Source: Octopus sinensis
Lineage: Eukaryota
Assembly (NCBI RefSeq): GCF_006345805.1
Contig: NW_021828079.1
Location: 1 to 35,319, forward strand
DNA: 35,319 nt
Direction of reading: 5' to 3'
In this document: piece by piece, positions 6,408-35,250 of the stretch
Layout of the letters: each line of letters starts with the position of its first letter
How positions within the stretch are numbered: the stretch's first letter is position 1
Translations under genes and position numbers: made by a program
The notes under the pieces: generated by a model
Told to the model about the DNA's origin: nothing
What the model saw: only the letters and a program-made list of their open reading frames with translations
Databases searched by the model: none

Positions 6408-6566
6408 AGGAGTGGCTGTGTGGTATGTAGCTTGCTTACGAACCACATGGTTCCAGGTTCAGTCCCACTGCGTGGCACCTTGGGCAAGTTTCTTCTACTA
6501 TAGCCTCGGGCCGACCAAAGCCTTGGTTGGTGGATTTGGGAGAGGGAAACTGAAAGAAGCCCGTCG

Positions 6567-6614
<48 letters not shown>

Positions 6615-6835
6615 GTGTCTGTGTATGTTTGTGTGTCTGTGTTTGTCCCGCGCAACACCCCTTGACAACCGATGCTGGTGTGTTTACGTCCCCGTAACTT
6701 AGCGGTTCGGCCAAAGTGACCCATAGAGTAAGTACTAGGCTTACAAAGAATAAGTCCTGGGGTCGATTTGCTCGACTAAAGGTGATGCTCCAGCATGGCA
6801 ACAGTCAAATGACTGAAACAAGTAAGAAGCGAGAG
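6408..6835 (+). mobile_element. tRNA-derived SINE, family B (my label), with central (TA)n(TG)n tract
   Basis: Head GGAGTGGCTGTGTGG...GGTTCAGTCCC and 3' end GACTGAAACAAGTAA; several near-identical copies in the window. Confidence 0.9.
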
Positions 6836-10317: not shown

Positions 10318-11006
10318 CGAGGTGGTATCAAAAAGTTCGCGGACGTGTTCTGTAGCGTGCTTAATGGATGGCATCACATGGTTGCGTGTACAGTGACCTT
10401 CATGAGGCACTGTGCCGAGTGACATCGCGGTGTTTACTTCGCAATTTGTGAAATGTATGCTTTTGTGATCACGTGTATGGTGTAATCTATGATTTTGTCG
10501 TGGGCAGGAACAAAGAGCCAACGTGAAACTTTGCGTTAAACTTAGGGAAGTCTGCTGCAGAGACATTGAGCATGCTGCTTCAGCAAGCTTACGACCCACG
10601 AGGCAATGGGGTGCACGCAATGTTTTGAGTGGCAGGGACCATTCAAAATTGGAAGAATTTCCCTGGAAGACGATGAGCGATTTAGGAGACCTGCTTCGAG
10701 CGTCACCCTCGGAAATGTGGTATTATGCATCAAGGATTCATCCCCCAGGGCCAGACCGGCAATCGAGAGATCTACTCGACGTTTGGAAGCGATTGAATAA
10801 GGATATTCGGATCTGTGGAGGGCGAAGTATTGGATTCTTCCCAACGACAATGCACTTTGTCACCGAGCTCTCTTTACCCGTGAGTTCCTCGCCAAAAACA
10901 TGGTATCACTTCCACACCTACCTGCCCTATTCGCCAGATTTAGCACCAGCTGACTTCCGTCTCTTCCCCAAGATGAAAAGGCAGCTCAAAGAAGGTCACC
11001 TCTTCG
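10318..11006 (+). mobile_element. mariner (Tc1/mariner) transposon relic with internally deleted transposase pseudogene
   Basis: TA then TIR-like CGAGGTGGTATCAAAAAGTTCGCGGAC; frameshifted motifs EQRANVKLCVKL, TQCFEW..FKIGRISLEDDER, GIMHQGFIPQGQT, WILPNDNA, PYSPDLAPADFRLFPKMK. No right TIR found. Confidence 0.9.
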
Positions 11007-11051
11007 TTGCCTTACAGTATTTGTATACTAGTTTCAAATTTTGGCACAATG

Positions 11052-11277
11052 CCAGCAATTTCAGAAGAGGGTTAAACCGATTGCATCAACCCCAGTACGC
11101 AAACGGAAAGGCAAAGTCGACCTGGCAGAATTCGAAATCACAGCGTAAAGGGACGAACGAAACACAGAAAAGCAAAGTCGACCTCGGCAGAATTCAAAAT
11201 CACAGCGTAAAGAAAGGGACAAAATGTCGCCAAGTATTTTCTCCGACGTGATAACGATTCTGCTTGCTCGCTGCCGT
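11052..11277 (-). mobile_element. Family A SINE with internal ~60 bp tandem duplication
   Basis: GCAAAGTCGACCT(C)GGCAGAATTC(G/A)AAATCACAGCGTAAAG occurs twice; the rest is the reverse complement of the family A head. Confidence 0.75.
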
Positions 11278-11883: not shown

Positions 11884-11994
11884 ATACACTGCGTATGTGT
11901 GTATGTGATGAAATTAGGTATGTACAATACATTCATACACACGTGTGTGTAGTCTCGTATTCTTACCTACATACATAATCACACTCACATACAG

Positions 11995-12039
<45 letters not shown>

Positions 12040-12040
12040 G
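11620..12040. repeat. (CA)n/(TA)n microsatellite block
   Basis: Direct reading. Confidence 0.9.
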
Positions 12041-12523
12041 TACACAGAATCTTGCCCTATACCATTGCTCAGTTGATTTGAGCAAAGCATTCGATATTCT
12101 TAGTCGAAATGCTCTGTGGATAATTCTAAAGAAAATAGGTTGCCCAGAGAAATTTGTAAACATGATCAGAGCTTTGCATCAAGATATGAAGGCTAGAATT
12201 AATTTTGGTGGTAGGCTTTCTGAATCTTTTGCCGTGGAAAATGGAGTAAAGCAAGGAGACTTTGATGCACCCACCATCTTTGCAATATACTTTGCTGTTG
12301 TGCTGTCACACGCTTTTCAAAACTCCGAGGAGGGTGCTTACATAGAATATCGAACAACAGGGAATATTTGCGATTTGATCAAACTGAAATTCAAAACAAA
12401 GGTTTTTACTTCACTCATTAGGTAACTCTTATACGCTGATGATTGCGATCTTGTCAGTCACTCTGAAACGGGCCTGTAGTCCCTTGTATCTGCATTAGAC
12501 ACAGCTTGTAATGATTTTGGCTT

Positions 12524-12926
12524 ACTCTTTACTCTTTTACTTGTTTCAGTCATTTGACTGCGGCCATGCTGGAGCACCGCCTTTAGTCGAGCAAATCGAC
12601 CCCGGGACTTATTCTTTCTAAGCCTAGTACTTATTCTATCGGTCTCTTTTGCCGAACCGCTAACTGACGGGGACGTAAACACACCAGCATCGGTTGTCAA
12701 GCAATGCTAGAGGGACAAACACAGACACACAAACATATACACACACATACATATATATACATATATACGACAGGCTTCTTTCAGTTTCCGTCTACCAAAT
12801 CCACTCACAAGGCTTTGGTCGGCCCGAGGCTATAGCAGAAGACACTTGCCCAAGGTGCCACGCAGTTGGACTGAACCCGGAACCATGTGGTTGGTTAGCA
12901 AGCTACTTACCACACAGCCACCTCCT
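12524..12926 (-). mobile_element. Family B SINE inserted in the LINE
   Basis: Full reverse-complement copy flanked by a 54 bp direct repeat (12470-12523 and 12927-12980). Confidence 0.92.
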
Positions 12927-13454
12927 GGGCCTGTAGTCTCTTGAATCTGCATTAGACACAGCTTGTAATGATTTTGGCTTGACCACCAAAAAAAAAAAAA
13001 AAAAAAGAAACAGTTGTAATGTTTCGATCTGCATGTGGTGCTGTTTCCAACCCCTTGAACATTTTCGTTGAGAGTAAGTTACTTGAGTTTGTTGACTCTT
13101 TCATTTACCTAGGAAGCTCTGTACAAAATGATGGAAATCTGAACACAGAAATACATCTGCGAATTCAAAGGGCAGCAGAAGCATTTGGTGATTTAGAGTC
13201 ACATGTTTGGCGCCAACAACATATAAATAACAACACCAAATTGGCTCTTTACGAATCCTTTGTCTTACCATCTCTGTTGCATTCTACTGAAATATGGATG
13301 TTTTATTAAGACATTTCAAATTGTTAGAACGATTCCACCAAAACTGCCTTCGCCGCATTTTAATCATTAAACGAGGCTTTTTTTTTACTCCAGACTCAAA
13401 TGTCTTTACGTCTGCAGGCACCACTTCAGTTAAATCAATGGTTCTGAAAAACCG

Positions 13455-13685
13455 AGGCGGCGAGCTGGCAGAAACGTTAGCACGCCGGGCGAAATGCTTA
13501 GCGGTATTTCGTCTGAGTTACGTTGTGAGTTCAAATTCCGCCGAGGTCGACTTTGCCTTTCATCCTTTCGGGGTCGATAAATTAAGTACCAGTTGCGCAC
13601 TGGGGTCGATGTAATCGACTTAATACCTATGTCTGTCCTTGTTTGTCCCCTCTGTGTTTAGCCCCTTGTGGGTAATAAAGAAATA
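13455..13685 (+). mobile_element. Family A SINE inserted in the LINE
   Basis: Full copy; 13 bp TSD GGTTCTGAAAAAC at 13440-13452 and 13686-13698. Confidence 0.92.
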
Positions 13686-13929: not shown

Positions 13930-14242
13930 AATGACGGCGACTAATGATGTTGAAGACGACGACGTCGACGGCGATGATGACGACGAAGTCGATGATGACG
14001 GCTTCGGTTTTGGTGATGATGATGATGATGGTAGTGTTAGTGGTGCTGGCGACGGTGGTGATGACGACGACGACGATGACAGGGATGATGATGGTCATTA
14101 TGATGATGATGATAATGAGGTTGATAACAAACAACGGCGATGACTATGCCGCTGCTGCTGCTGCTTCTGCTGTTGCTGCTGCTTGTAGAGGTTTTGGTTA
14201 CGAAACTGCTGGTAGTATTGTCAACGACGACGACGATGGTGG

Positions 14243-14273
<31 letters not shown>

Positions 14274-14697
14274 AGTGGTGGATGTGGTGAAGGTGGTGGT
14301 GGTGGTGATGATGATGATGGTGGTGGAGGTGGTGGTGGTGGTGATGATGATGATGATGATGATGATGTTGATGATGATGATGATGATGATGGTGGAGGTG
14401 GAGGTGGGAAGGTGGTGTTGGTGATGATGATGATGGTGGTGGAGGTGGTGGTGGTGGGGTGATATGAATGATGATGATGATGTTTGATGATTATGATGAT
14501 GATGATGGTGGAGGTGGAGGTGGTGAAGGTGGTGGTGGTGATGATGATGATGGTGGTGGAGGTGGTGGTGGTGGTGGTGATGATGATGATGATGATGATG
14601 TTGATGATGATGATGATGATGATGGTGGAGGTGGAGGTGGTGAAGGTGGTGGTGGTGATGATGATGATGGTGGTGGTGGAGGTGGTGGTGGTGGCGG

Positions 14698-14728
<31 letters not shown>

Positions 14729-14930
14729 GGTGGTGGTGGTGGTGGTGATGATGATGATGATATGATGTTGATGATGATGATATGATGATGGTGGAGGTGG
14801 AGGTGGTGAAGGTGGGGTGTGTGATTGAATGATGGTGGTGGTGGAGGTGGTGGTGGTGGTGATGATGATGATGATGGTGGTGGTGGTGGATGTGGTGAAG
14901 GTGGTGGTGGTGATGATGATGATGATGAAG
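13930..14930. repeat. (GAT)n/(GGT)n/(GAC)n mosaic with ~118 bp higher-order period
   Basis: Direct reading; the variant marker (T/G)GAAGG recurs at 14288, 14407, 14524 and 14641. Confidence 0.9.
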
Positions 14931-15471: not shown

Positions 15472-15660
15472 GTGGAGGCGCAATGGCCCAGTGGTTAGAG
15501 CAGCGGACTCGCGGTCGTAAGAACGCGGTTTCGATTGATGTTTCGACAGGGCATTGTGAGTGTTTATTGAGCAAAAACACCTAAGCTCCACGAGGCTCCG
15601 GCGCGGGGTGGTGGTGGTGGTGAATTCCGCTGTACTCTTTCACCACAACTTTCTCTCACT
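15472..15660 (+). mobile_element. Family C SINE, 5' part only
   Basis: Matches 4406-~4585, then switches to family B sequence. Confidence 0.85.
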
Positions 15661-15831
15661 GTGTGGCAAGTAGCTTGTTTACCAACCACACGATTCCGGG
15701 TTCAGTCCCACTGCGTCGCACCTTGGGCAAGTGTCTTCTACTATAACCTCGGGCCGACCAAAAATTTGTGAGTGGATTTGGTAGACGGAAACTGAAAAAA
15801 AGCCCGTCGTATATATATATATATATATATA

Positions 15832-15990
15832 TAGGGAAAGTTTACGAAAAAAACAAAAGACGAAGACAGGTGGTGTACAAAACAAACAGATGTATTAGTA
15901 TAACGCTCAGGAACAGAAAAAGTCTTTTACGTTTCGAGCCTACGCTCTTCTACAGAAAGGGACACAGAAAAAACAAGGAGAGAAAAATAA
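15832..15990 (-). mobile_element. Element D (my label): short repeat carrying a minimal hammerhead-like motif
   Basis: Homologous copies at 21187, 22448 (fragment), 23533, 24621, 32158 and 35060; strand given is the ribozyme-sense strand. Confidence 0.85.
15922..15963 (-). ncRNA. Putative minimal type I hammerhead ribozyme, variant core (U6), GUA cleavage triplet
   Basis: Minus strand GTCCCTTT-CTGTAGA-A-GAGC(GTAG)GCTC-GAAAC-GTA-AAAGAC: stem I CTTT/AAAG, stem II hairpin, loopless palindromic ACGT helix III. Activity is inferred, not shown. Confidence 0.55.
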
Positions 15991-16321
15991 ATATAAAAAT
16001 AACGTAATGACAAAAATGACAGTTTTACGTCAGTGCGTGTTTGTGTGTCTGCGTTTGTCCCCCCAACATCACTCGACAACTGATGCTGGTGTGTTTACGT
16101 CCCTGCAACTTAGCGGTTCGGCATAAGAGACCGATAGAATAAGTATTAGGCTTCCAAAGAATAAGTCCTGGGGTCGATTTGCTCGACTAAGGGCGGTGCT
16201 CCAGCATGGCCGCAGTCAAATGACTGAAGTAAAAGAGTAGAATCGCCTCATTGCGACCTAAATAGGAAGTTTTTCTTTCCAAATGAGAAAGGGACAGGAC
16301 CCACAACTGGGAGTTCTTTTT

Positions 16322-17957: not shown

Positions 17958-18127
17958 ATTGTAAGTAGTGTATGTAATAGCAGAAGCAGAGACATCAGCA
18001 ACCGACTGGAAAACAACATAATTACTCCGTAACACTGCAATCATCATTAACTTCCTCAGAAACACATCGTGGCTTTACAGAAGTAGCATCACCCTTGTCG
18101 CTACATTCGCCGTGATCATCACCATAA

Positions 18128-18158
<31 letters not shown>

Positions 18159-19740
18159 GTCGTCGTCGTCGTCGTCGTCATCACCACCTTCACCACCACC
18201 ACCACCACCACCACCATCATCATCATCATATTATGATCAACATCAACATCATCGGTATCACACACTCATGATCTACACCACCACCACCACCTCTACCTCC
18301 ACCACCACTACCATCAGCTACACCACCATCATCACCAACATCATCATCGTCGTCGTCTTTGTCATCGTCATCATCATCGTCATCATCATCACCACGACCA
18401 CGACCACCTCTGCCCCCACCCTCACCAACATCATCACCGTCATCATCATCATCATCGTCATCACCAACACCACCACCTCAGCCACCGCCTGCATTCCCAC
18501 CACCACCACCAACATCATCGTTGTCGTCTTTGTCATCGTCATCATCGTCATCATCACAACCACCACCACCACCACCACCACCAACCCACAACAAGAACAA
18601 CATCAACAACAACAGCAACAACAACAACATGGATGCTTCTACTCTAATCTATTTTCGCATTTAAGCTCCTTCCCTTTGCATCATACCCCCCCCCCCCACC
18701 TACACCCCTCTTTCCCATCGCCACCAACACGTTCTTCTCTTTTCTTTATTCTGCTTTACTACCCAGGAGCAAGACAGCTGTCATTGCCGTTTATACTACA
18801 GTCCACCCCACTCACCTACCCTATGGTACCTACCATCTTTTTTTAAACTGCTATTCCCTCCCCCACCCTTACCCCCCACCAATAAAGTCACACCGCCAGA
18901 ATTACCAGCAGCAGCACCAGAGCAGCATCGTCACCATCATCTTTATCACCACATCTCCTACCATCCCCAAAGCTGTCATATCTACGAACACCACTACCAC
19001 CACCATACCGCCGCCGCTACCACTCCACCCCCACCTCCACAACCAACACCACCAACGCTACTATTTCCATCACCGCTGCCGCTGCCACCGCCAAACCAAA
19101 GACCTTAAACTCCTCTTCATAGTCCCTAACACTACCCTTAAGACCACCACCACCACCACCACCATCACCGACGTAACTTCGAACCATCATGGGGGCTTCT
19201 AGAAATAGTATCCTAATATCCCTCAAATTACGTACTGGCATCTTAGGAACAAAAAAGACAATTGAATAATGTGGTTCTGGGTACCTTATGTGTAAGGAAT
19301 CGAATGAGATGGTCACAGCTGGAAAGCTGTCCATTGTAGGTTTGCTTGTCCAAGAATCACGTCGCTTGTCCAGCATTTACCGACGCGACCACCGTCACCA
19401 TCACTTTATACGACACCGCAGCCACCATCACCACTACCACCGCCACCACCGCCACCTTCTTTGACACAACTACCATCCCCGCCGCGACCATCCTCGCTAT
19501 CACCATCACCAATATCATCATCAACATTCTCATCTCTCCACCACCATCATCACTACCTCCACCATCGCCACCACCAAGACGACGACCACCAACTCCACCA
19601 TCCTACCGTCATCGTCGCCGCCGTAGCAATCACCAGCATCAACAACACCACCAAAACCATACCCACCACCACCATCAACACCATACCCATCATCGGCCCC
19701 CATCACCTGCCCTCCACTCACCCCGACATCACTTAATGTG
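17775..19740. repeat. Cryptically simple (ATT/TAG/CAG/CAT/CAC/CAA)n mosaic
   Basis: Direct reading; all frames give homopolymeric peptides. Confidence 0.85.
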
Positions 19741-20002
19741 AAATACATTTATCACCAAAACATAAAGGCTTTTATTGTCTTCATTTTTCTTAGCAATGTC
19801 TTCTGTTCAGCCGAAAATAACCCCCAAACCCCACCGACCCACCCAGCACTTCATAACTCAGAGCCCCATACCTAGCCAACCCACCTCCAAGTATCACCCC
19901 AACTGTATTTCTATCCTGTGCACAGGGTCTCTTTTAAAAATACTACCCCATGTCGTAATCTACTCACTCATTGCACACACGCACGCACGCACACACACAC
20001 AC

Positions 20003-20118: not shown

Positions 20119-20523
20119 GAGTGTGGCTGTGTGGTAAGTAGCTTGCTTACCAACCACATGGTTCCGGGTTCAGTCCCACTACGTGGCACCTTGGGCAAGT
20201 GTCTTCTGCTATAGCCTCGGGCCGACCAATGCCTTGTGAGTGGATTTGGTAGACGGAAACTGAAAGAAGCCTGTCGTATATATGTATATATATATGTGTG
20301 TCTGTATGTGTTTGTGTGTCTGTGTTTGTCCCCCTAGCATTGCTTGACAACCGATGCTGGTGTGTTTACGTCCCCATCACTTAGCGGTTCGGCAAAAAGT
20401 GACCGATAGAATAAGTACTGGGCTTACAAAGAATAAGTCTCGGGGTCGATTTGCTCGACTAAAGGCGGTGCTACAGCATGGCCGCAGTCAAATGAATGAA
20501 ACAAGTAAAAGAGTAAAAGAGTA
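20119..20523 (+). mobile_element. Family B SINE, full length
   Basis: Matches the other family B copies end to end, tail (GTAAAAGA)n. Confidence 0.9.
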
Positions 20524-20937: not shown

Positions 20938-20972
<35 letters not shown>

Positions 20973-21014
20973 ATGTGTGAGTATGTGTATGTGTATGTAT
21001 ATATAGACAGATAA

Positions 21015-21053
<39 letters not shown>

Positions 21054-21102
21054 AGGTTTTTATCCAGCATGCGGCAGCTGCATGGCTGAAACGAATAAAG
21101 GA

Positions 21103-21186: not shown

Positions 21187-21380
21187 GGGGAGAGTTTACA
21201 AAAAAAAAACATGAGACGAAGACAGGTGTGTACAAACAAAACTGATGTATTAGTATAACACTCAGGAATAGAAAAAGTCTTTTACGTTTCGAGCCTACGC
21301 TCTTCTACAGAAAGGGACACAGAAAAACACGAGGAAACCAGGAGAGAAAAATAATGTGTGCAGTGGCTAACGATCTATCA
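21187..21380 (-). mobile_element. Element D between (TA)n tracts
   Basis: Homologous to 15832-15990; hammerhead-like motif at 21277-21318 (core CTGTAGA, GUA). Confidence 0.85.
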
Positions 21381-21398
21381 TATATAATATATGTATGT

Positions 21399-22398: not shown

Positions 22399-22456
22399 CC
22401 CTTTTTAAAGCCTAGCCAGGCTCAGGAGCCCGGTTTCCCGGTTTCTATCGCGTATG
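22399..22456 (-). mobile_element. 3' end of a family E SINE (my label), detached from its head
   Basis: Reverse complement GAAACCGGGAAACCGGGCTCCTGAGCC matches 32950-32990. Confidence 0.6.
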
Positions 22457-22503
22457 TTGTCTACAGCACCTGTCTTCGTCTTCTGTTTTTTTGTGAATTC
22501 TCT
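22448..22503 (+). mobile_element. Element D terminal fragment, no ribozyme motif
   Basis: TATGTTGTCTACAGCACCTGTCTTCGTCTT...GTGAATTCTC matches 32240-32300. Confidence 0.75.
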
Positions 22504-22517
22504 CTCTCTCTCTCCCC

Positions 22518-23501: not shown

Positions 23502-23532
23502 TATATATAGATATATATATAGCGGTGGGGGC

Positions 23533-23725
23533 GGGAAATCACGAAAAAAAAACAACAACAAAAGACGAAGACAGGTGGTGTAGAAAACAAACAGATGTAT
23601 TAGTTTAACGTTCGGGAAGTGAAAAAGACTTTGACGTTTCGAGCCTACGCTCTTCCACAGAAAGGAACATAGAAAGGAGAGAAACAAGGAGAGAGAAAAT
23701 GTGTGTAGTGGCTACCGATCTATCA
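23533..23725 (-). mobile_element. Element D
   Basis: Hammerhead-like motif at ~23629-23665 (core CTGTGGA, GUC triplet). Confidence 0.85.
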
Positions 23726-23800
23726 TGGCGAATGCCGGACAGAATGGTCACACAGGAGAGCTAATAAGAAGTAGGGGATATATATATATATATACAATAT

Positions 23801-24620: not shown

Positions 24621-24778
24621 GGGAGAATTCACAAAAAAAAAATGGAAGACGATGACAGGTGCTGTAGACAACATACAGATGTATTAGTTTAACGCCCGGG
24701 AAGTGAAAAAGTCTTTTAACTTTTCGAGCCTACGCTCTTTCCACAGAAAGGAAAACAGGAAGAAACAGGGAAATGGGA
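24621..24778 (-). mobile_element. Element D with degenerate ribozyme motif
   Basis: Core CTGTGGA and stem II intact; helix III mutated (GAAAAGTTA). Confidence 0.8.
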
Positions 24779-24792
24779 AATATATATACATC

Positions 24793-25606
24793 AGGCTTCT
24801 TTCGATTTCCGTTTTACGAAATCCACTCACTAGGCTTTAGTCGGATCGACGATATAGTAGAAAGCACTTGTCCAAGGTGCCACATAGTGGGACTGAACTC
24901 AGAACCATGAGACAGGGAAGCAAACTACTTACCACACCCATGCCTGCATATGAAACAATTCTATCACATGTATGTAACTCTCTTCTGGACATATAATTAT
25001 TTTCTTTGCATGTACTTACAACTTATGTATGTTACTCTCCATTCATCTGGCGTTCTCTCTATGATACGCATTTCATTCCGTCATTCTAACTAAACCACAC
25101 ATTTCATTCTCTTATTCTATACATAGAACACGCTTCGTTCTTTCATTCTAGTTTATACCTCACACAGAAATGCATTATATAATGAATCACTCAAACATTT
25201 GCGATATAAATACATTAATCAATTAATCAATAGCTGAGCAGTCCCCGGACCAATTGAGATCAATGGGCGTGAAAATGGGGAATGTTGTTGTCGTTGCTGG
25301 CATACCTTCTCAAGTACACTTAAAATGATAATTCACGGGGTCGATAAAGTAAAGTACCATTCAAGAACAGGATCGATAAAATCGAAGAACGCCTCCTCCA
25401 AAACTTCAAGCCTTGTGTCTTTTAATAGAATGAATTATAAGCTGTAAGAATAAGAATATTGAGGTTTTAATTCACAGATCAGTTAAATAGTCCATTAATT
25501 GCTGTCAGGTTGCGTGGTGCCCCAATAGCTCAGTGGTTTAGAGCACTGGTTTCGTAAATCAGGAGTCGTGAGTTCGAATCTCACTTGGGGCAGTTTTCTT
25601 GGTACA
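24793..25606 (+). repeat. Left arm of long inverted duplication
   Basis: Reverse complement of 30585-31396; about 14 differences over 24901-25518 by eye. Confidence 0.95.
25519..25592 (+). tRNA. tRNA-Thr-CGT: tRNA-Thr(CGT), copy 1
   Basis: 74 nt cloverleaf: acceptor GCCCCAA/TTGGGGC, D stem GCTC/GAGC, anticodon loop TT-CGT-AA (one G-U in the stem), T loop TTCGAAT; T4 terminator at 25594-25597. Confidence 0.93.
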
Positions 25607-26733: not shown

Positions 26734-26925
26734 GTAGGTGGGAATAGCATGAATGCTACAACTTAAATTCCTTCCTCAATTTAGTATGTTTCAATATATT
26801 GTTAGGTGAACATGAACAGCAAATATCTAAACAATAATCATTATATTCATATTAGCAGCAGCAAATGACACTTTAAATAGATCGACCAAAGTAATAGTGC
26901 AATAACAAAGATCCCGAAGCGTGGT

Positions 26926-26999
26926 GCCCCAATAGCTCAGTGGTTTAGAGCACTGGTTTCGTAAACCAGGAGTCGCGAGTTCGAATCTCGCTTGGGGCA
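26926..26999 (+). tRNA. tRNA-Thr-CGT: tRNA-Thr(CGT), copy 2
   Basis: Perfect cloverleaf; T stem GCGAG/CTCGC; T-run terminator ~17 nt downstream. Confidence 0.95.
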
Positions 27000-27210
27000 G
27001 TACTTGTTCGATAACTTTTTTTTTATATTTTAAATTGGGATAAATTTCTTTTGTTAAGGCGCGCGTGGTTATTTTAGTTAAGCGATACATTAATTCCTCC
27101 ACTGTCGCTGCTGTTACGTTCCAAAACCTCCCGCAGAAATAATTAAAATATAGATACCTATCGGCCACAAAAACCCGCGATATAAATTTGCATATGTAAG
27201 CCAGAAAGAT

Positions 27211-27404: not shown

Positions 27405-27569
27405 TAGGCGCAGGAGTGGCTGTGTGGTAAGTAGCTTGCTTACCAACCACATGGTTCCGGGTTCAGTCCCACTGCGTGGCACCTTGGGCAAGTGTCTTCT
27501 ACTATAGCCTCGGGCCGACCAAAACTTTGAGTGGATTTGGTAGACGGAAACTGAAAGAAGCCCGTCGTA

Positions 27570-27619
<50 letters not shown>

Positions 27620-27840
27620 CGTGTGTGTTTGTGTGTCTGTATTTGTCCCTTAGTATCGTTTGACAACCGATGCTGGTGTGTTTATGTTCCCGTCACTTAG
27701 CGGTTCGGCAAAAAGAGACCAATAGAATAAGTACTGGGCTTACAAAGAATAAGTCCCGGGGTCGAGTTGCTCGACTAAAGTTGGTGCTCCAGCATGGCCG
27801 CTGTCAAATGACTGAAACAAGTAAAAGAGTAAAGAGTAAA
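27405..27840 (+). mobile_element. Family B SINE, full length
   Basis: End-to-end match with the other copies. Confidence 0.9.
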
Positions 27841-28327: not shown

Positions 28328-28544
28328 ACTCTTTTACTCTCTTTTACCTGTTTCAGTCGTTTGACTGCGGCCATGCTGGAGCACCGCCTTAAATCAAGCA
28401 ACTCGACCCCGGGACTTATTCTTTTGTAAGCCCAGTACATATTCTATCGGTCTCTTTTGCCGAACCGCTAAGTAACGGGGACATAAACACACCAGCATCG
28501 GTTGTCAAGCAATGCTGGGGGGACAAACACAGACACACAAACAT

Positions 28545-28615
<71 letters not shown>

Positions 28616-28778
28616 ACGGGCATCTTTCAGTTTCCGTCTACCAAATCCACTCACAAAGCTTTGTTCGGCCCGCGGCTATAGCAGAAGACACTTGCCCAAG
28701 GTGCCACGCAGTGGGACTGAACCCGGAAGTATGTGGTTGGTAAACAAGTTACTTACCACACAGCCACTCCTGCGCCTA
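28328..28778 (-). mobile_element. Family B SINE, full length
   Basis: End-to-end reverse-complement match. Confidence 0.9.
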
Positions 28779-29006
28779 TGTACATTTATAGTTACGTGTC
28801 TTTCCATTTTTAATATGGTAGAGGCCAATTCTTGGAAATTTGCCTGCTATTCTTAGCGAAATTTATCTTCGATAGTTCAAAATGATGTACGAAATTTTAA
28901 ATACCAATAAATATCCTAAACACTACTCAATCTAAGATCATATTCTCTAACTGCGAAAATTTCGTAGCACAAAATTATCGTCAGTTTGTAAAAGAATGCA
29001 ACTTAC

Positions 29007-29080
29007 TGCCCCAAGTGAGATTCGAACTCACGACTCCTGGTTTACGAAACCAGTGCTCTAAACCACTGAGCTATTGGGGC
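29007..29080 (-). tRNA. tRNA-Thr-CGT: tRNA-Thr(CGT), copy 3
   Basis: Reverse complement is the same 74 nt cloverleaf; T4 run ~14 nt downstream. Confidence 0.95.
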
Positions 29081-29175
29081 ACAACGAATAAAGGTATTTA
29101 TTATTGCACTGTAACTCTGGTCGATCATATTAAAGCAACATCTGTCACTAATGTAAATGTAATGATTAAGCCGGC

Positions 29176-30584: not shown

Positions 30585-31394
30585 TGTACCAAGTAAACTG
30601 CCCCAAGTGAGATTCGAACTCACGACTCCTGGTTTACGAAACCAGTGCTCTAAACCACTGAGCTATTGGGGCACCACGCAAACTGACAGCAATTAATGGA
30701 CTATTTAACTGATCTGTGAATTAAAACCTCAACATTCTTATTCTTAGAGCTTATAATTCATTCTATTAAAAGACACAAGGCTTGAAGTTTTGGAGGAGGT
30801 GTTCTTCGATTTTATCGATCCTGTTCTTGAATGGTACTTTACTTTATCGACCCTGTAAATTATCATTTTAAGTGTACTTGAGAAGGTATGCCAGCAACGA
30901 CAACAACATTCCCCATTTTCACGCCCATTGATCTCAATTGGTCCGGGGACTGCTCAGCTATTGATTAATTGATTCGTGTATTTATATCGCAAATGTTTGA
31001 GTGATTCATTATATAATGTATTTCTGTGTGAGGTATAAACTAGAATGAAAGAACGAAGCGTGTTCTATGTATAGAATAAGAGAATGAATGTGTGGTTTAG
31101 TTAGAATGACGGAATGAAATGCGTAGCATAGAGAGAACGCCAGATGAATGGAGAGTAACATACATAAGTTGTGAGTACATGCAAAGAAAACAATTATATG
31201 TCCAGAAGAGAGTTACATACATGTGATAGAATTGTTTCATATGCAGGCATGGGTGTGGTAAGAAGTTTGCTTCCCTGTCTCATGGTTCTGGGTTCAGTCC
31301 CACTGTGTGGCACCTTGGGCAAGTTTCTTCTACTATAGCCTCGGGCCGACCAAAGCCTAGTGAGTCGATTTCTTTGACGGAAATCGAAAGAAGC

Positions 31395-31396
<2 letters not shown>
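30585..31396 (-). repeat. Right arm of long inverted duplication
   Basis: Reverse complement of 24793-25606. Confidence 0.95.
30599..30672 (-). tRNA. tRNA-Thr-CGT: tRNA-Thr(CGT), copy 4
   Basis: Identical to copy 3 over 74 nt; T5 run ~15 nt downstream. Confidence 0.95.
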
Positions 31397-31443
<47 letters not shown>

Positions 31444-32118: not shown

Positions 32119-32157
<39 letters not shown>

Positions 32158-32160
<3 letters not shown>

Positions 32161-32300
32161 GTTTCTTTCTGTGGAAGAGCGTAGGCTCGAAACTTTAAAA
32201 GACTTTTCCCTTCTCGAGCGTTAAACTAATACTGCTGTATGTTGTCTACACCACCTGTCTTCGTCTTCCGTTTTTTGTGATCCGAGATACGTAACATTGC
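32158..32300 (+). mobile_element. Element D, opposite orientation
   Basis: CTTT-CTGTGGA-A-GAGCGTAGGCTC-GAAAC-TTTA-AAAGAC at 32165-32203; helix III degenerate. Confidence 0.85.
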
Positions 32301-34074: not shown

Positions 34075-35055
<981 letters not shown>

Positions 35056-35059
35056 GTTC

Positions 35060-35250
35060 AAAGTTACAGAAAAACAAAAGACGAAGACAGGTGTAGGAAA
35101 AACAAGCAGGTGTATTCGTTTAACACTCGGGGAAAATGGAAAAGTCTTTGACGTTTCGAGCCTACGCTCTTCGACAGAAAGGAATAATAGGGAAAAATGG
35201 ACAGAGAATGAAAAAAAAAAAAAAACGGCGAGAGAAAAAGTACACACATA
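35060..35250 (-). mobile_element. Element D
   Basis: Hammerhead-like motif at 35144-35182 (core CTGTCGA, GUC triplet). Confidence 0.85.

What the first reader, a model, noticed from the sequence alone, without database searches (positions are those of the whole stretch)
15922..15963. Dispersed short element D encodes a minimal hammerhead-ribozyme fold
Seen: six copies (motifs at 15922, 21277, ~23629, ~24711, 32165, 35144) read CTTT-CTGTNGA-A-GAGC(GTAG)GCTC-GAAAC-GT-H-AAAG on one strand. This gives stem I CTTT/AAAG, a 4 bp stem II, and a loopless palindromic ACGT helix III; four copies are intact and two have a damaged helix III. Established: Penelope-like elements and metazoan non-LTR retrozymes carry minimal type I hammerheads whose palindromic helix III needs dimerisation, and an extra A after A9 occurs in natural hammerheads (CChMVd). 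Inference: D is a 150-200 bp non-autonomous, ribozyme-bearing retroelement (retrozyme-like or Penelope terminal-repeat derivative), abundant here at seven copies in 35 kb. I do not know whether it has been described.
Basis: partly seen in the sequence, partly recalled or inferred. Interest (0 to 1): 0.85.

Follow-up and report, generated by a model that had tools for sequence, protein, structure and literature searches.

The report
Hammerhead-like motif in short retroposon
A short mobile repeat that lands in TA microsatellites has, as its best-conserved part, a sequence built like the minimal hammerhead ribozymes of Penelope-like retroelements, but an essential core base is changed in every copy, so it is probably a relative of a known kind and may not cut RNA.

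Summary
Six copies of CTTT-CTGTNGA-A-GAGC(GTAG)GCTC-GAAAC-GT-H-AAAG sit where stated. Four are intact and two have an altered helix III. A seventh copy is only a 3' fragment.

D is a real mobile insertion. One copy interrupts the internal (TA)n(TG)n of a SINE whose five paralogues are empty. Copies share one 3' end, have laddered 5' ends (54-251 bp), and abut microsatellites, mostly (TA)n. That pattern indicates reverse-transcribed, 5'-truncated copies, not a fixed 150-200 bp unit. 

The motif is not a chance match: the descriptor found nothing in 10 Mb of simulated sequence. It is also the least variable 36 columns of D, and only N7 and H17 vary freely. It carries the published hallmarks of Penelope-like-element "min-HHRs": no helix III, a palindromic 15.2-16.2, an extra base after A9, and G10.1-C11.1. 

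Rfam hammerhead models do not match, and the stems show no covariation. Copies are dispersed, not tandem, so D is not a retrozyme.

Best reading: a 3'-terminal or non-autonomous derivative of a Penelope-like element carrying a min-HHR-derived motif whose catalysis is doubtful. No further copies could be retrieved.

The parts
15834..15987 (-). D copy 1 (154 bp of D homology), inserted into the internal microsatellite of a composite SINE
   Evidence: nhmmer hit, E=7.5e-55. Five paralogous SINE copies lack it. Boundaries.
15924..15959 (-). Hammerhead-like motif of copy 1 (the finding): CTTT/CTGTAGA/A/GAGC-GTAG-GCTC/GAAA/CG/T/A/AAAG
15988..16035 (-). About 48 nt of unique sequence at the 5' junction of copy 1, containing the palindrome ACGTAA...TTACGT. 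It is not homologous to the other copies.
   Evidence: Alignment to empty sites. Occurs only once in the window.
21187..21381 (-). D copy 2 (195 bp, with a 5' extension ATGATAGATCG...). Motif at 21279-21314. (TA)n on both sides.
23527..23777 (-). D copy 3, the longest (251 bp). Motif at 23629-23664. Long (TA)n directly 5', (TA)n about 15 nt 3'.
24621..24779 (-). D copy 4 (159 bp). Motif at 24713-24750 with an extra A and GAAAAGTT (helix III palindrome lost). (TA)n on both sides.
32157..32281 (+). D copy 5 (125 bp). Its 5' end lies only 8 nt upstream of the motif at 32165-32201 (GAAACTTT, palindrome lost). (TA)n directly 5', none 3'.
35056..35240 (-). D copy 6 (185 bp). Motif at 35146-35181. 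Flanked by (TG)n on the 5' side and (ATAG)n/(ACAG)n on the 3' side.
22452..22505 (+). D copy 7: only the 3'-terminal ~54 bp, without the motif. It ends at the common 3' terminus and abuts (TC)n.
   Evidence: nhmmer E=1.3e-9, model positions 135-188. Sequence.

Best explanation
D is the 3'-terminal part of a retroelement that integrates into microsatellites, mainly (TA)n. It could be a set of 5'-truncated copies or a short non-autonomous derivative. It most likely belongs to, or is mobilised by, a Penelope-like element (PLE).

Proposed mechanism:
1. An RNA in the motif-sense orientation is copied into DNA at a nicked microsatellite target, starting from a fixed 3' end (...TTTTTTGTRAAYTCTCCC).
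2. Reverse transcription often stops early, which gives the ladder of 5' ends.
3. About 110 nt from the 3' end the RNA carries a descendant of the PLE 'min-HHR'. This is a type I hammerhead without helix III that can only assemble when two copies pair through the palindrome ACGU.
4. In source elements the motif is under constraint. Because A6 is U in every copy, I expect cleavage to be weak or lost. The constraint may then reflect residual factor-assisted cleavage or recognition by the element's protein.

Shown here: mobility, the microsatellite association, a constant 3' end with variable 5' ends, a non-chance match to the min-HHR architecture, and excess conservation of the motif.

Inferred: the RNA intermediate, the PLE affiliation, dimerisation, and any catalysis.
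For: Mobility:
- Copy 1 lies inside the (TA)n(TG)n of a SINE whose five paralogues are uninterrupted.

Retroposon-like anatomy:
- All seven copies share the same 3' end, and their 5' ends fall at 54, 125, 154, 159, 185, 195 and 251 bp.
- There are no terminal inverted repeats.

Target bias:
- 8 of 12 flanks abut (TA)n, although perfect (TA)>=5 tracts cover only 4.1% of the window. Of the other flanks, three abut (TG)n, (ATAG)n or a (TG)n-rich stretch, and the fragment's 3' end abuts (TC)n.
- Copy 5 has (TA)n only on its 5' side. This argues that (TA)n is the target and not just the element's own tail.

The motif is not chance:
- A min-HHR descriptor allowing at most one core mismatch hits only the four intact D copies in the window.
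- It hits nothing in 10 Mb of simulated sequence, both strands.
- My analytic estimate is about 5e-9 per position.

Constraint:
- The motif has 5 of 36 variable columns, against 44 of 91 in the 3' part and 23 of 29 in the 5' part. Fisher p = 2.6e-4.
- It is the least variable of 121 sliding 36-column windows.
- The three-state columns are exactly N7 (A/G/C) and H17 (A/C/U).

Family hallmarks that are independent of the catalytic boxes (PMC4209133):
- a base between positions 9 and 10.1 (6 of 6 copies)
- the G10.1-C11.1 pair (6 of 6)
- a palindromic 15.2-16.2 (4 of 6)
- helix I of 4-5 bp
- mostly solo copies, interpreted there as truncated PLEs

PLE clades with a (TA)n insertion bias are documented (PMC8557442).
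Against: - The core reads CUGUNGA in 6 of 6 copies. A6 changes are strongly deleterious (PMC3088659, PMC9901934), and min-HHRs are already weak in vitro (PMC4209133).
- No Rfam hammerhead family matches. This is weak evidence, because those models expect a helix III.
- The stems are invariant, so there is no covariation.
- Loop 2 (GUAG) is also invariant. A minimal hammerhead does not require that, so the constraint may be for something else.
- Two of six copies lack the palindrome.
- In whole-element folds the stem II pairing probability is 0.4 or lower in five of six copies, and stem I is about 0.
- No PLE reading frame (GIY-YIG or PLE-type RT) is detectable in the window. The only RT is a LINE fragment.
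- A LINE-mobilised element with a microsatellite tail would give much the same anatomy.
- Only seven copies from one 35-kb window were available.
Confidence: 0.55

Rival explanations
1. One reading: D carries an active hammerhead that self-cleaves as a dimer, and it behaves as a retrozyme-like element, with unit-length and possibly circular RNA intermediates.
For: - The architecture and hallmarks match min-HHRs, and the motif is the most conserved part of D, with free variation only at N7 and H17 (PMC4209133).
- A natural A6C variant keeps measurable activity (PMC3088659).
- The isolated 49-nt motif can adopt the stem I plus stem II structure within 1.2 kcal/mol of its minimum free energy.
Against: - U6 is present in all copies.
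- In pairwise mutagenesis, mutations of the CUGA turn gave low activity that second mutations did not rescue (PMC9901934).
- Even canonical-core min-HHRs cleave poorly, and only as dimers (PMC4209133).
- There are no tandem D-D arrays here. Spacing is 1.1-7.5 kb.
- No copy begins at the predicted cleavage site.
- Two copies lack the palindrome.
- The defining retrozyme features, tandem repeats and a canonical type I HHR (PMC7229834), are absent.
Confidence: 0.15
2. D is an ordinary LINE-dependent retroposon (a SINE-like element or a truncated LINE 3' end) with a microsatellite tail. The conserved hairpin block would be a binding site for the partner's reverse transcriptase or another signal, and its likeness to a hammerhead would be coincidental or an ancient, meaningless relic.
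For: - The constant 3' end, 5' truncation and microsatellite at the 3' end fit LINE-type retroposition equally well.
- The core is non-canonical and there is no Rfam match.
- Loop 2 is invariant and the stems are invariant.
- A second conserved block, CACCTGTCTTCGTCT, exists outside the motif.
- A LINE RT fragment is present in the window, but no PLE frame.
Against: - The chance rate of the descriptor match is about 5e-9 per position, with 0 hits in 10 Mb.
- The motif also has three hallmarks not needed for a hairpin signal: the extra base after A9, G10.1-C11.1, and the ACGU palindrome followed by H.
- D shares no sequence with the LINE fragment or the SINEs in the window.
- Copy 5 has (TA)n only upstream.
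Confidence: 0.22
3. D is a DNA transposon derivative. One option is a MITE of the Tc1/mariner type, which duplicates TA. The other is a Helitron fragment, which inserts between A and T and has a 3' hairpin.
For: TA-rich flanks on both sides of several copies. An internal GC-rich hairpin, GAGC-GTAG-GCTC.
Against: - The only inverted repeats reported at the element ends lie in the flanking AT-rich repeat tracts.
- The 5' ends are variable, not fixed.
- The ends are not TC...CTRR, and the hairpin sits about 110 nt from the 3' end, not 10-12 nt.
- Some copies lie in (TG)n, (ATAG)n or (TC)n.
Confidence: 0.03

Closest known systems
Minimal hammerheads (min-HHRs) in the terminal repeats of Penelope-like elements (Cervera & de la Pena 2014, PMC4209133)
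   Same: Type I layout with no helix III or loop 3. Palindromic 15.2-16.2, so two copies must pair. Helix I of 4-5 bp. An unpaired base between A9 and G10.1. A conserved G10.1-C11.1 pair. Mostly solo, dispersed copies in invertebrate genomes.
   Different: D has U rather than A at core position 6 in every copy. Its helix II is 4 bp, against 6-8 bp in the described min-HHR families. No PLE reading frame or terminal-repeat pair could be linked to D. The six copies show no variation in the stems, whereas published families are full of covariation.
[quoted passage not shown] 2021, PMC8557442)
   Same: Strong insertion bias for microsatellites, (TA)n in Naiads. Extra 30-40-bp 'tails' at one end of insertions, which may correspond to the ~48-nt unique junction sequence of copy 1. 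Naiads lack canonical HHRs, but some carry core-like strings.
   Different: No N-terminal GIY-YIG or RT frame is seen here. The paper reports cephalopod Naiads only as old remnants. The link is by behaviour, not by sequence.
Metazoan non-LTR retrozymes (Cervera & de la Pena 2020, PMC7229834; bioRxiv 10.64898/2026.07.22.740005)
   Same: Short (150-450 bp), non-coding, AT-rich repeats bearing a type I hammerhead. They are proposed to derive from PLE terminal repeats.
   Different: Retrozymes are head-to-tail tandem arrays with canonical-core HHRs and give circular RNAs. D copies are dispersed singles with a loopless, non-canonical motif.
Natural hammerhead core variants: the extra base after A9 in CChMVd (cited in PMC4209133), and the A6C hammerhead of phage Bcep176 (Perreault et al. 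2011, PMC3088659)
   Same: These are precedents for both deviations seen in D. The insertion after A9 is tolerated. A change at A6 exists in nature with low activity (under 0.1 per min).
   Different: D combines both deviations in a minimal, tertiary-contact-free context. A6U itself is not among the natural variants I could find described.
Sm-alpha / Sj-alpha SINE-like retroposons of schistosomes (cited in PMC6765202)
   Same: A short dispersed retroposon carrying a hammerhead.
   Different: Those have a pol III promoter and a canonical, active hammerhead with a helix III. D has no A or B box that I could recognise, and it has a T5 run just after the motif that would stop pol III.

Membership tests
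Hammerhead ribozyme (catalytic core) | 5' box C3-U4-G5-A6-N7-G8-A9 | tested here: not met
   All six copies read CUGUNGA, with U at position 6. The strict descriptor gives 0 hits. Hits appear only when one core mismatch is allowed.
Hammerhead ribozyme (catalytic core) | 3' box G12-A13-A14 followed by A15.1, with U16.1-H17 at the cleavage site | tested here: met
   GAAA is invariant in 6 of 6 copies. U then H (A, C or U) follows in all copies.
Hammerhead ribozyme (catalytic core) | Helix II closed by G10.1-C11.1 | tested here: met
   GAGC/GCUC, 4 bp, loop GUAG, in 6 of 6 copies. The stem is invariant, so covariation cannot be assessed.
Hammerhead ribozyme (catalytic core) | Helices I and III supported by pairing and covariation | tested here: inconclusive
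   Helix I is CUUU/AAAG, 4 bp, invariant. Helix III is possible only between two molecules (ACGU) and only in 4 of 6 copies. Stem I pairing probability is about 0 in whole-element folds.
Hammerhead ribozyme (catalytic core) | Match to a curated hammerhead covariance model (Rfam Hammerhead_1, _3, _II, HH9, HH10) | tested here: not met
   No hammerhead hit at gathering score, none among the 150 whole-window matches listed at E<=10 (50 lower-scoring ones were not shown), and none at E<=10 on the 106-nt slice 15890-15995.
Hammerhead ribozyme (catalytic core) | Site-specific self-cleavage | not testable with these tools
   Needs in vitro transcription or mapping of RNA ends.
PLE min-HHR | No helix III or loop 3, with palindromic positions 15.2-16.2 | tested here: met
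   ACGU in 4 of 6 copies; AAGU and ACUU in the other two. Feature as defined in PMC4209133.
PLE min-HHR | Conserved unpaired base between positions 9 and 10.1 | tested here: met
   An extra A in 6 of 6 copies (two in copy 4). Feature from PMC4209133.
PLE min-HHR | Located in the terminal repeat of an element encoding a PLE-type RT and GIY-YIG endonuclease | tested here: inconclusive
   A Pfam scan of 143 open frames in the window found only one RVT_1 hit, in the LINE fragment, and no GIY-YIG. The published families are also mostly solo copies. No other DNA from this genome could be retrieved.
Non-LTR retrozyme | Head-to-tail tandem repeats of 150-450 bp | tested here: not met
   Copies are 1.1-7.5 kb apart, in both orientations. 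No D-D junctions were found.
Non-LTR retrozyme | Canonical type I HHR (helix I about 6 bp with loop 1-loop 2 contacts, and a short helix III with a loop) | tested here: not met
   Helix I is 4 bp and open, there is no loop 1 or loop 3, and the core is non-canonical. Features from PMC7229834.
Non-LTR retrozyme | Expression as small circular RNAs | not testable with these tools
   No transcriptome data were available.
Retroposon inserted by target-primed reverse transcription (LINE or PLE type) | Constant 3' end, variable 5' truncation, and demonstrable insertion | tested here: met
   Filled versus empty sites. A common 3' terminus with 5' ends at 54-251 bp.
MITE / TIR transposon or Helitron | Terminal inverted repeats, or TC...CTRR ends with a subterminal 3' hairpin | tested here: not met
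   The only inverted repeats reported at the element ends lie in the flanking AT-rich repeat tracts. The end sequences do not fit.

The most novel reading that the evidence does not exclude
The U6 motif is a working natural hammerhead variant: A6U combined with the insertion after A9, in a helix-III-less dimeric format. In that case D RNAs are really cut after GUH in the animal. Alternatively, the hammerhead fold has been taken over as a non-catalytic recognition element for the element's reverse transcriptase. Either reading would explain why a 'broken' core is the best-conserved part of the element across subfamilies.
Probability: 0.12. Interest if true: 0.6.

Novelty: new member of a known kind. 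Interest (0 to 1): 0.3.

Why it matters
Minimal hammerheads scattered by Penelope-like elements are among the most numerous ribozyme-like sequences in animal genomes, yet their activity and purpose are unsettled. D offers a compact case in which the motif is clearly constrained although an essential catalytic-core base is changed in every copy.

If the motif still cleaves, it widens the known sequence space of the hammerhead core. If it does not, the conservation of min-HHRs in these elements need not be about catalysis. Both outcomes can be tested with a handful of transcripts.

Otherwise the finding is ordinary repeat annotation: a microsatellite-seeking retroposon family in a repeat-rich invertebrate genome.

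Tried and rejected
Attempts to collect more D copies all failed:
- An exact-pattern scan of metagenome contigs with a motif-independent D pattern returned five loci, all chance matches with no D.
- Scans of viral contigs and of bacterial and archaeal genome contigs, with the D core and with the neighbouring SINE, returned nothing.
- A protein search with a chimera of D's open translation frames, hoping for spurious ORF calls, returned nothing.
- A protein search with the window's LINE RT gave only relatives at 61% identity or less. The three contigs fetched from them (L006-L008) hold no D and no similarity to the window.
- Exact look-ups of two window ORFs were not on record.
- Full-text searches for the motif string and the SINE string found no paper.
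- One paper's supplement list was empty, and the other paper's single supplementary file held no sequences.
- Lunse et al. 2017 on dimeric PLE hammerheads is not held.

Alternative structures and classes rejected:
- A larger helix III closed by the AAAA/UUUU hairpin downstream. It exists only in copy 1 and leaves no helix I.
- An extended, bulged helix I (GUC/GAC). It is not kept in the other copies.
- Re-registering the core so that an A falls at position 6. This is impossible for copies with G or C at N7.
- A pol III SINE. There is no A box, the B-box likeness of GGCTCGAAAC is only 8 of 11, and an internal T5 run follows the motif.
- A MITE or Helitron.
- The two long copies at 21.2 and 23.5 kb as the paired terminal repeats of one PLE. 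They are only 78.7% identical, and the interval between them has no RT or endonuclease hit.

The nested dot-bracket energy evaluation of the double-hammerhead dimer is not possible, because that topology is not nested.

Full report
OBSERVATION. The pattern CTGTNGAAGAGCNNNNGCTCGAAAC occurs five times, with zero hits in 100 shuffles. A sixth copy has one mismatch in the 17-mer GAGCGTAGGCTCGAAAC. On the motif strand the 36-38-nt units are at 15924-15959(-), 21279-21314(-), 23629-23664(-), 24713-24750(-), 32165-32201(+) and 35146-35181(-). Four units read CTTT-CTGTNGA-A-GAGC(GTAG)GCTC-GAAA-CG-T-H-AAAG. Copy 24713 has an extra A and GAAAAGTT. Copy 32165 has GAAACTTT. A profile of the whole repeat finds these six copies plus a 3' fragment at 22452-22502(+), and nothing else. 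The copy count therefore does not depend on the motif.

WHAT D IS. Self-comparison of the window shows a roughly 400-bp composite SINE built as part A, then (TA)n(TG)n, then part B. It is present many times. At 15659-16239 the two SINE halves are separated by D. An alignment with five paralogous SINE copies shows an uninterrupted microsatellite in all five, and a ~200-bp insertion (15834-16035) only here. D is therefore a mobile element caught as a filled site.

All copies share one terminus...TTTTTTGTRAAYTCTCCC in motif orientation. Their other ends differ: D homology extends 54, 125, 154, 159, 185, 195 and 251 bp from that terminus. The two longest copies share extra 5' sequence (ATGATAGATCG.TAGCCACT...). 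Copy 1 instead has about 48 nt of unique junction sequence. There are no terminal inverted repeats. This anatomy fits reverse-transcribed copies primed at a fixed 3' end and truncated at the 5' end. It also makes the motif strand the sense strand.

Eight of the twelve flanks of the six full copies abut (TA)n, although perfect (TA)>=5 tracts are only 4.1% of the window. Of the other flanks, three abut (TG)n, (ATAG)n or a (TG)n-rich stretch, and the fragment's 3' end abuts (TC)n. Copy 5 has (TA)n only upstream. This suggests that the microsatellite is the target and not merely a tail carried by the element.

IS THE HAMMERHEAD LIKENESS REAL? I wrote a descriptor modelled on the published min-HHR. 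It requires helix I of at least 4 bp, CUGANGA, an optional single base, helix II of 4-8 bp, a loop of 3-10 nt, GAAA, a complementary 15.2/16.2 pair, U, H, and the 3' strand of helix I. With the strict core the window has no hit. With one core mismatch allowed it has four hits, which are the four intact D copies. Ten megabases of first-order Markov sequence with the window's composition gave no hit on either strand at either stringency. My back-of-envelope rate is about 5e-9 per position. A chance match in a 35-kb window is therefore very unlikely, even counting the six copies as a single event.

Within D, the motif has 5 variable columns of 36, against 44 of 91 in the 3' part and 23 of 29 in the 5' part. 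Fisher p is 2.6e-4 against the 3' part. Among 121 sliding 36-column windows, the least variable one coincides with the motif. The two columns with three states are N7 (A, A, G, G, G, C) and H17 (A, A, C, U, U, C), which are exactly the core positions a hammerhead leaves free. Pairwise identity is 89-100% in the motif and 65-89% in the 3' remainder.

COMPARISON WITH THE LITERATURE. Cervera and de la Pena (PMC4209133) defined min-HHRs in the terminal repeats of Penelope-like elements (PLEs). These are type I motifs with no helix III and a short helix I (4-5 bp). The authors list features that emerged independently of their descriptor: a conserved base between positions 9 and 10.1, the G10.1-C11.1 pair, and palindromic 15.2-16.2. 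D has all three. They also report that most genomic copies are solo and probably truncated PLEs, that single motifs do not cleave, and that dimers cleave only weakly. Craig et al. (PMC8557442) document a strong (TA)n insertion bias in Naiad PLEs, a microsatellite bias in Neptune PLEs, and 30-40-bp extra 'tails' at insertion ends. These behaviours match D.

If the window is from an octopus, PLEs would be abundant. This is my recollection of the SINE sequence and is not verified by any tool. In Octopus vulgaris PLEs make up 6.83% of the genome in 190 families (PMC13282606).

WHAT SPEAKS AGAINST A WORKING RIBOZYME.
- Perreault et al. found one natural A6C hammerhead with kobs below 0.1 per min, in line with earlier mutagenesis (PMC3088659).
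- Pairwise mutagenesis shows that mutations of the CUGA U-turn gave low activity that second mutations did not rescue (PMC9901934).
- No Rfam hammerhead model matches at gathering score, among the 150 whole-window matches listed at E<=10 (50 lower-scoring ones were not shown), or in a 106-nt slice at E<=10. Models that expect a helix III are a poor test for a loopless motif.
- All stem positions and loop 2 are invariant, so there is conservation but no covariation.
- Two copies have lost the palindrome.
- In folds of whole copies, the stem II pairing probability is 0.4 or lower in five of six and helix I is not predicted. The isolated 49-nt motif does reach the two-stem structure within 1.2 kcal/mol of its optimum.
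- No copy starts at the predicted cleavage site.
- No two copies are in tandem. Spacing is 1.1-7.5 kb.

The defining features of non-LTR retrozymes, tandem arrays and canonical type I HHRs (PMC7229834), are therefore absent.

AFFILIATION. I could not link D physically to a PLE. Of 143 open frames in the window, only one hits a reverse-transcriptase model. That is the LINE fragment at about 11979-13611, itself interrupted by a SINE. None hits GIY-YIG. D shares no sequence with that LINE or with the SINEs. Every route to more DNA from this genome failed. The PLE assignment therefore rests on the motif's architecture and the insertion behaviour. A LINE-dependent retroposon with a conserved protein-binding hairpin remains a live rival.

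VERDICT. D is a microsatellite-targeting, 5'-truncating retroposon family. Its best-conserved segment is, with good probability, a descendant of the PLE minimal hammerhead. It carries a fixed substitution at an essential core position, it is not arranged like a retrozyme, and its catalysis is doubtful. This is a new family of a known kind. The one point of real interest is that a non-canonical core is conserved, which a few transcription assays and a genome-wide alignment would resolve.

Noticed in passing
window 6416-6817, 12530-12917(-), 15659-16239, 20127-20515, 27420-27831, 28352-28763(-), and partial copies at 24780-24937 and 31253-31424: A roughly 400-bp composite SINE-like repeat, built as part A, an internal (TA)n(TG)n, then part B, is the commonest repeat in the window (77-93% identity between copies). 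From memory it resembles an abundant octopus SINE, but no tool confirmed the organism.
   Followed up: partly
window 25518-25593(+), 26925-27000(+), 29006-29081(-), 30598-30673(-): Four tRNA-Thr(CGU) genes scoring 70-74 bits, arranged as two plus-strand and two minus-strand copies. An inverted segmental duplication (24780-25606 versus 31409-30585, 95.8% over 828 bp) carries the outer pair.
   Followed up: partly
window 24621-24779 versus 31409-31440: D copy 4 ends exactly at the boundary of the inverted duplication. The paralogous arm has only (TA)n there. This may be a second empty site, or it may just be the edge of the duplication. The alignment cannot tell which.
   Followed up: partly
window 11979-13611(+): A degenerate LINE reverse-transcriptase fragment (RVT_1) with frameshifts and stops, split by a SINE insertion at 12530-12917. 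The nearest database relatives are 61% identical or less and come from unrelated contigs.
   Followed up: partly
window 10493-11248(+): An open frame containing ...PYSPDLAPADFRLFPKMKRQLKEG..., which looks to me like the C-terminal part of a mariner-type transposase. Pfam gave no hit.
   Followed up: no
window 14235-14927 and about 18100-19750: A (GAT/GGT)n trinucleotide array (period 3 or 9, about 690 bp) with GC skew +0.56, and a pyrimidine-rich, low-complexity counterpart with GC skew -0.59 about 4 kb away. Together they look like an inverted pair of simple-repeat blocks flanking D copy 1.
   Followed up: no
window 16001-16032: The unique junction sequence at the 5' end of D copy 1 contains an imperfect palindrome (ACGTAA..TGTCA.....TGACA..TTACGT-like). 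It might be the kind of extra 'tail' described at PLE insertion ends, or a fragment of something else.
   Followed up: partly
whole window, e.g. 20958-21054, 34785-34941, 2248-2384: Dozens of sub-threshold Rfam microRNA 'hits' (mir-297, mir-466, mir-3149 and others) all lie on TA/TG microsatellites and are artefacts of low-complexity sequence.
   Followed up: yes
window, one of the 143 open frames (not identified): A single frame matched Pfam ANT (phage antirepressor KilAC domain) at E=7e-5. It is probably a chance hit in repeat-rich sequence.
   Followed up: no
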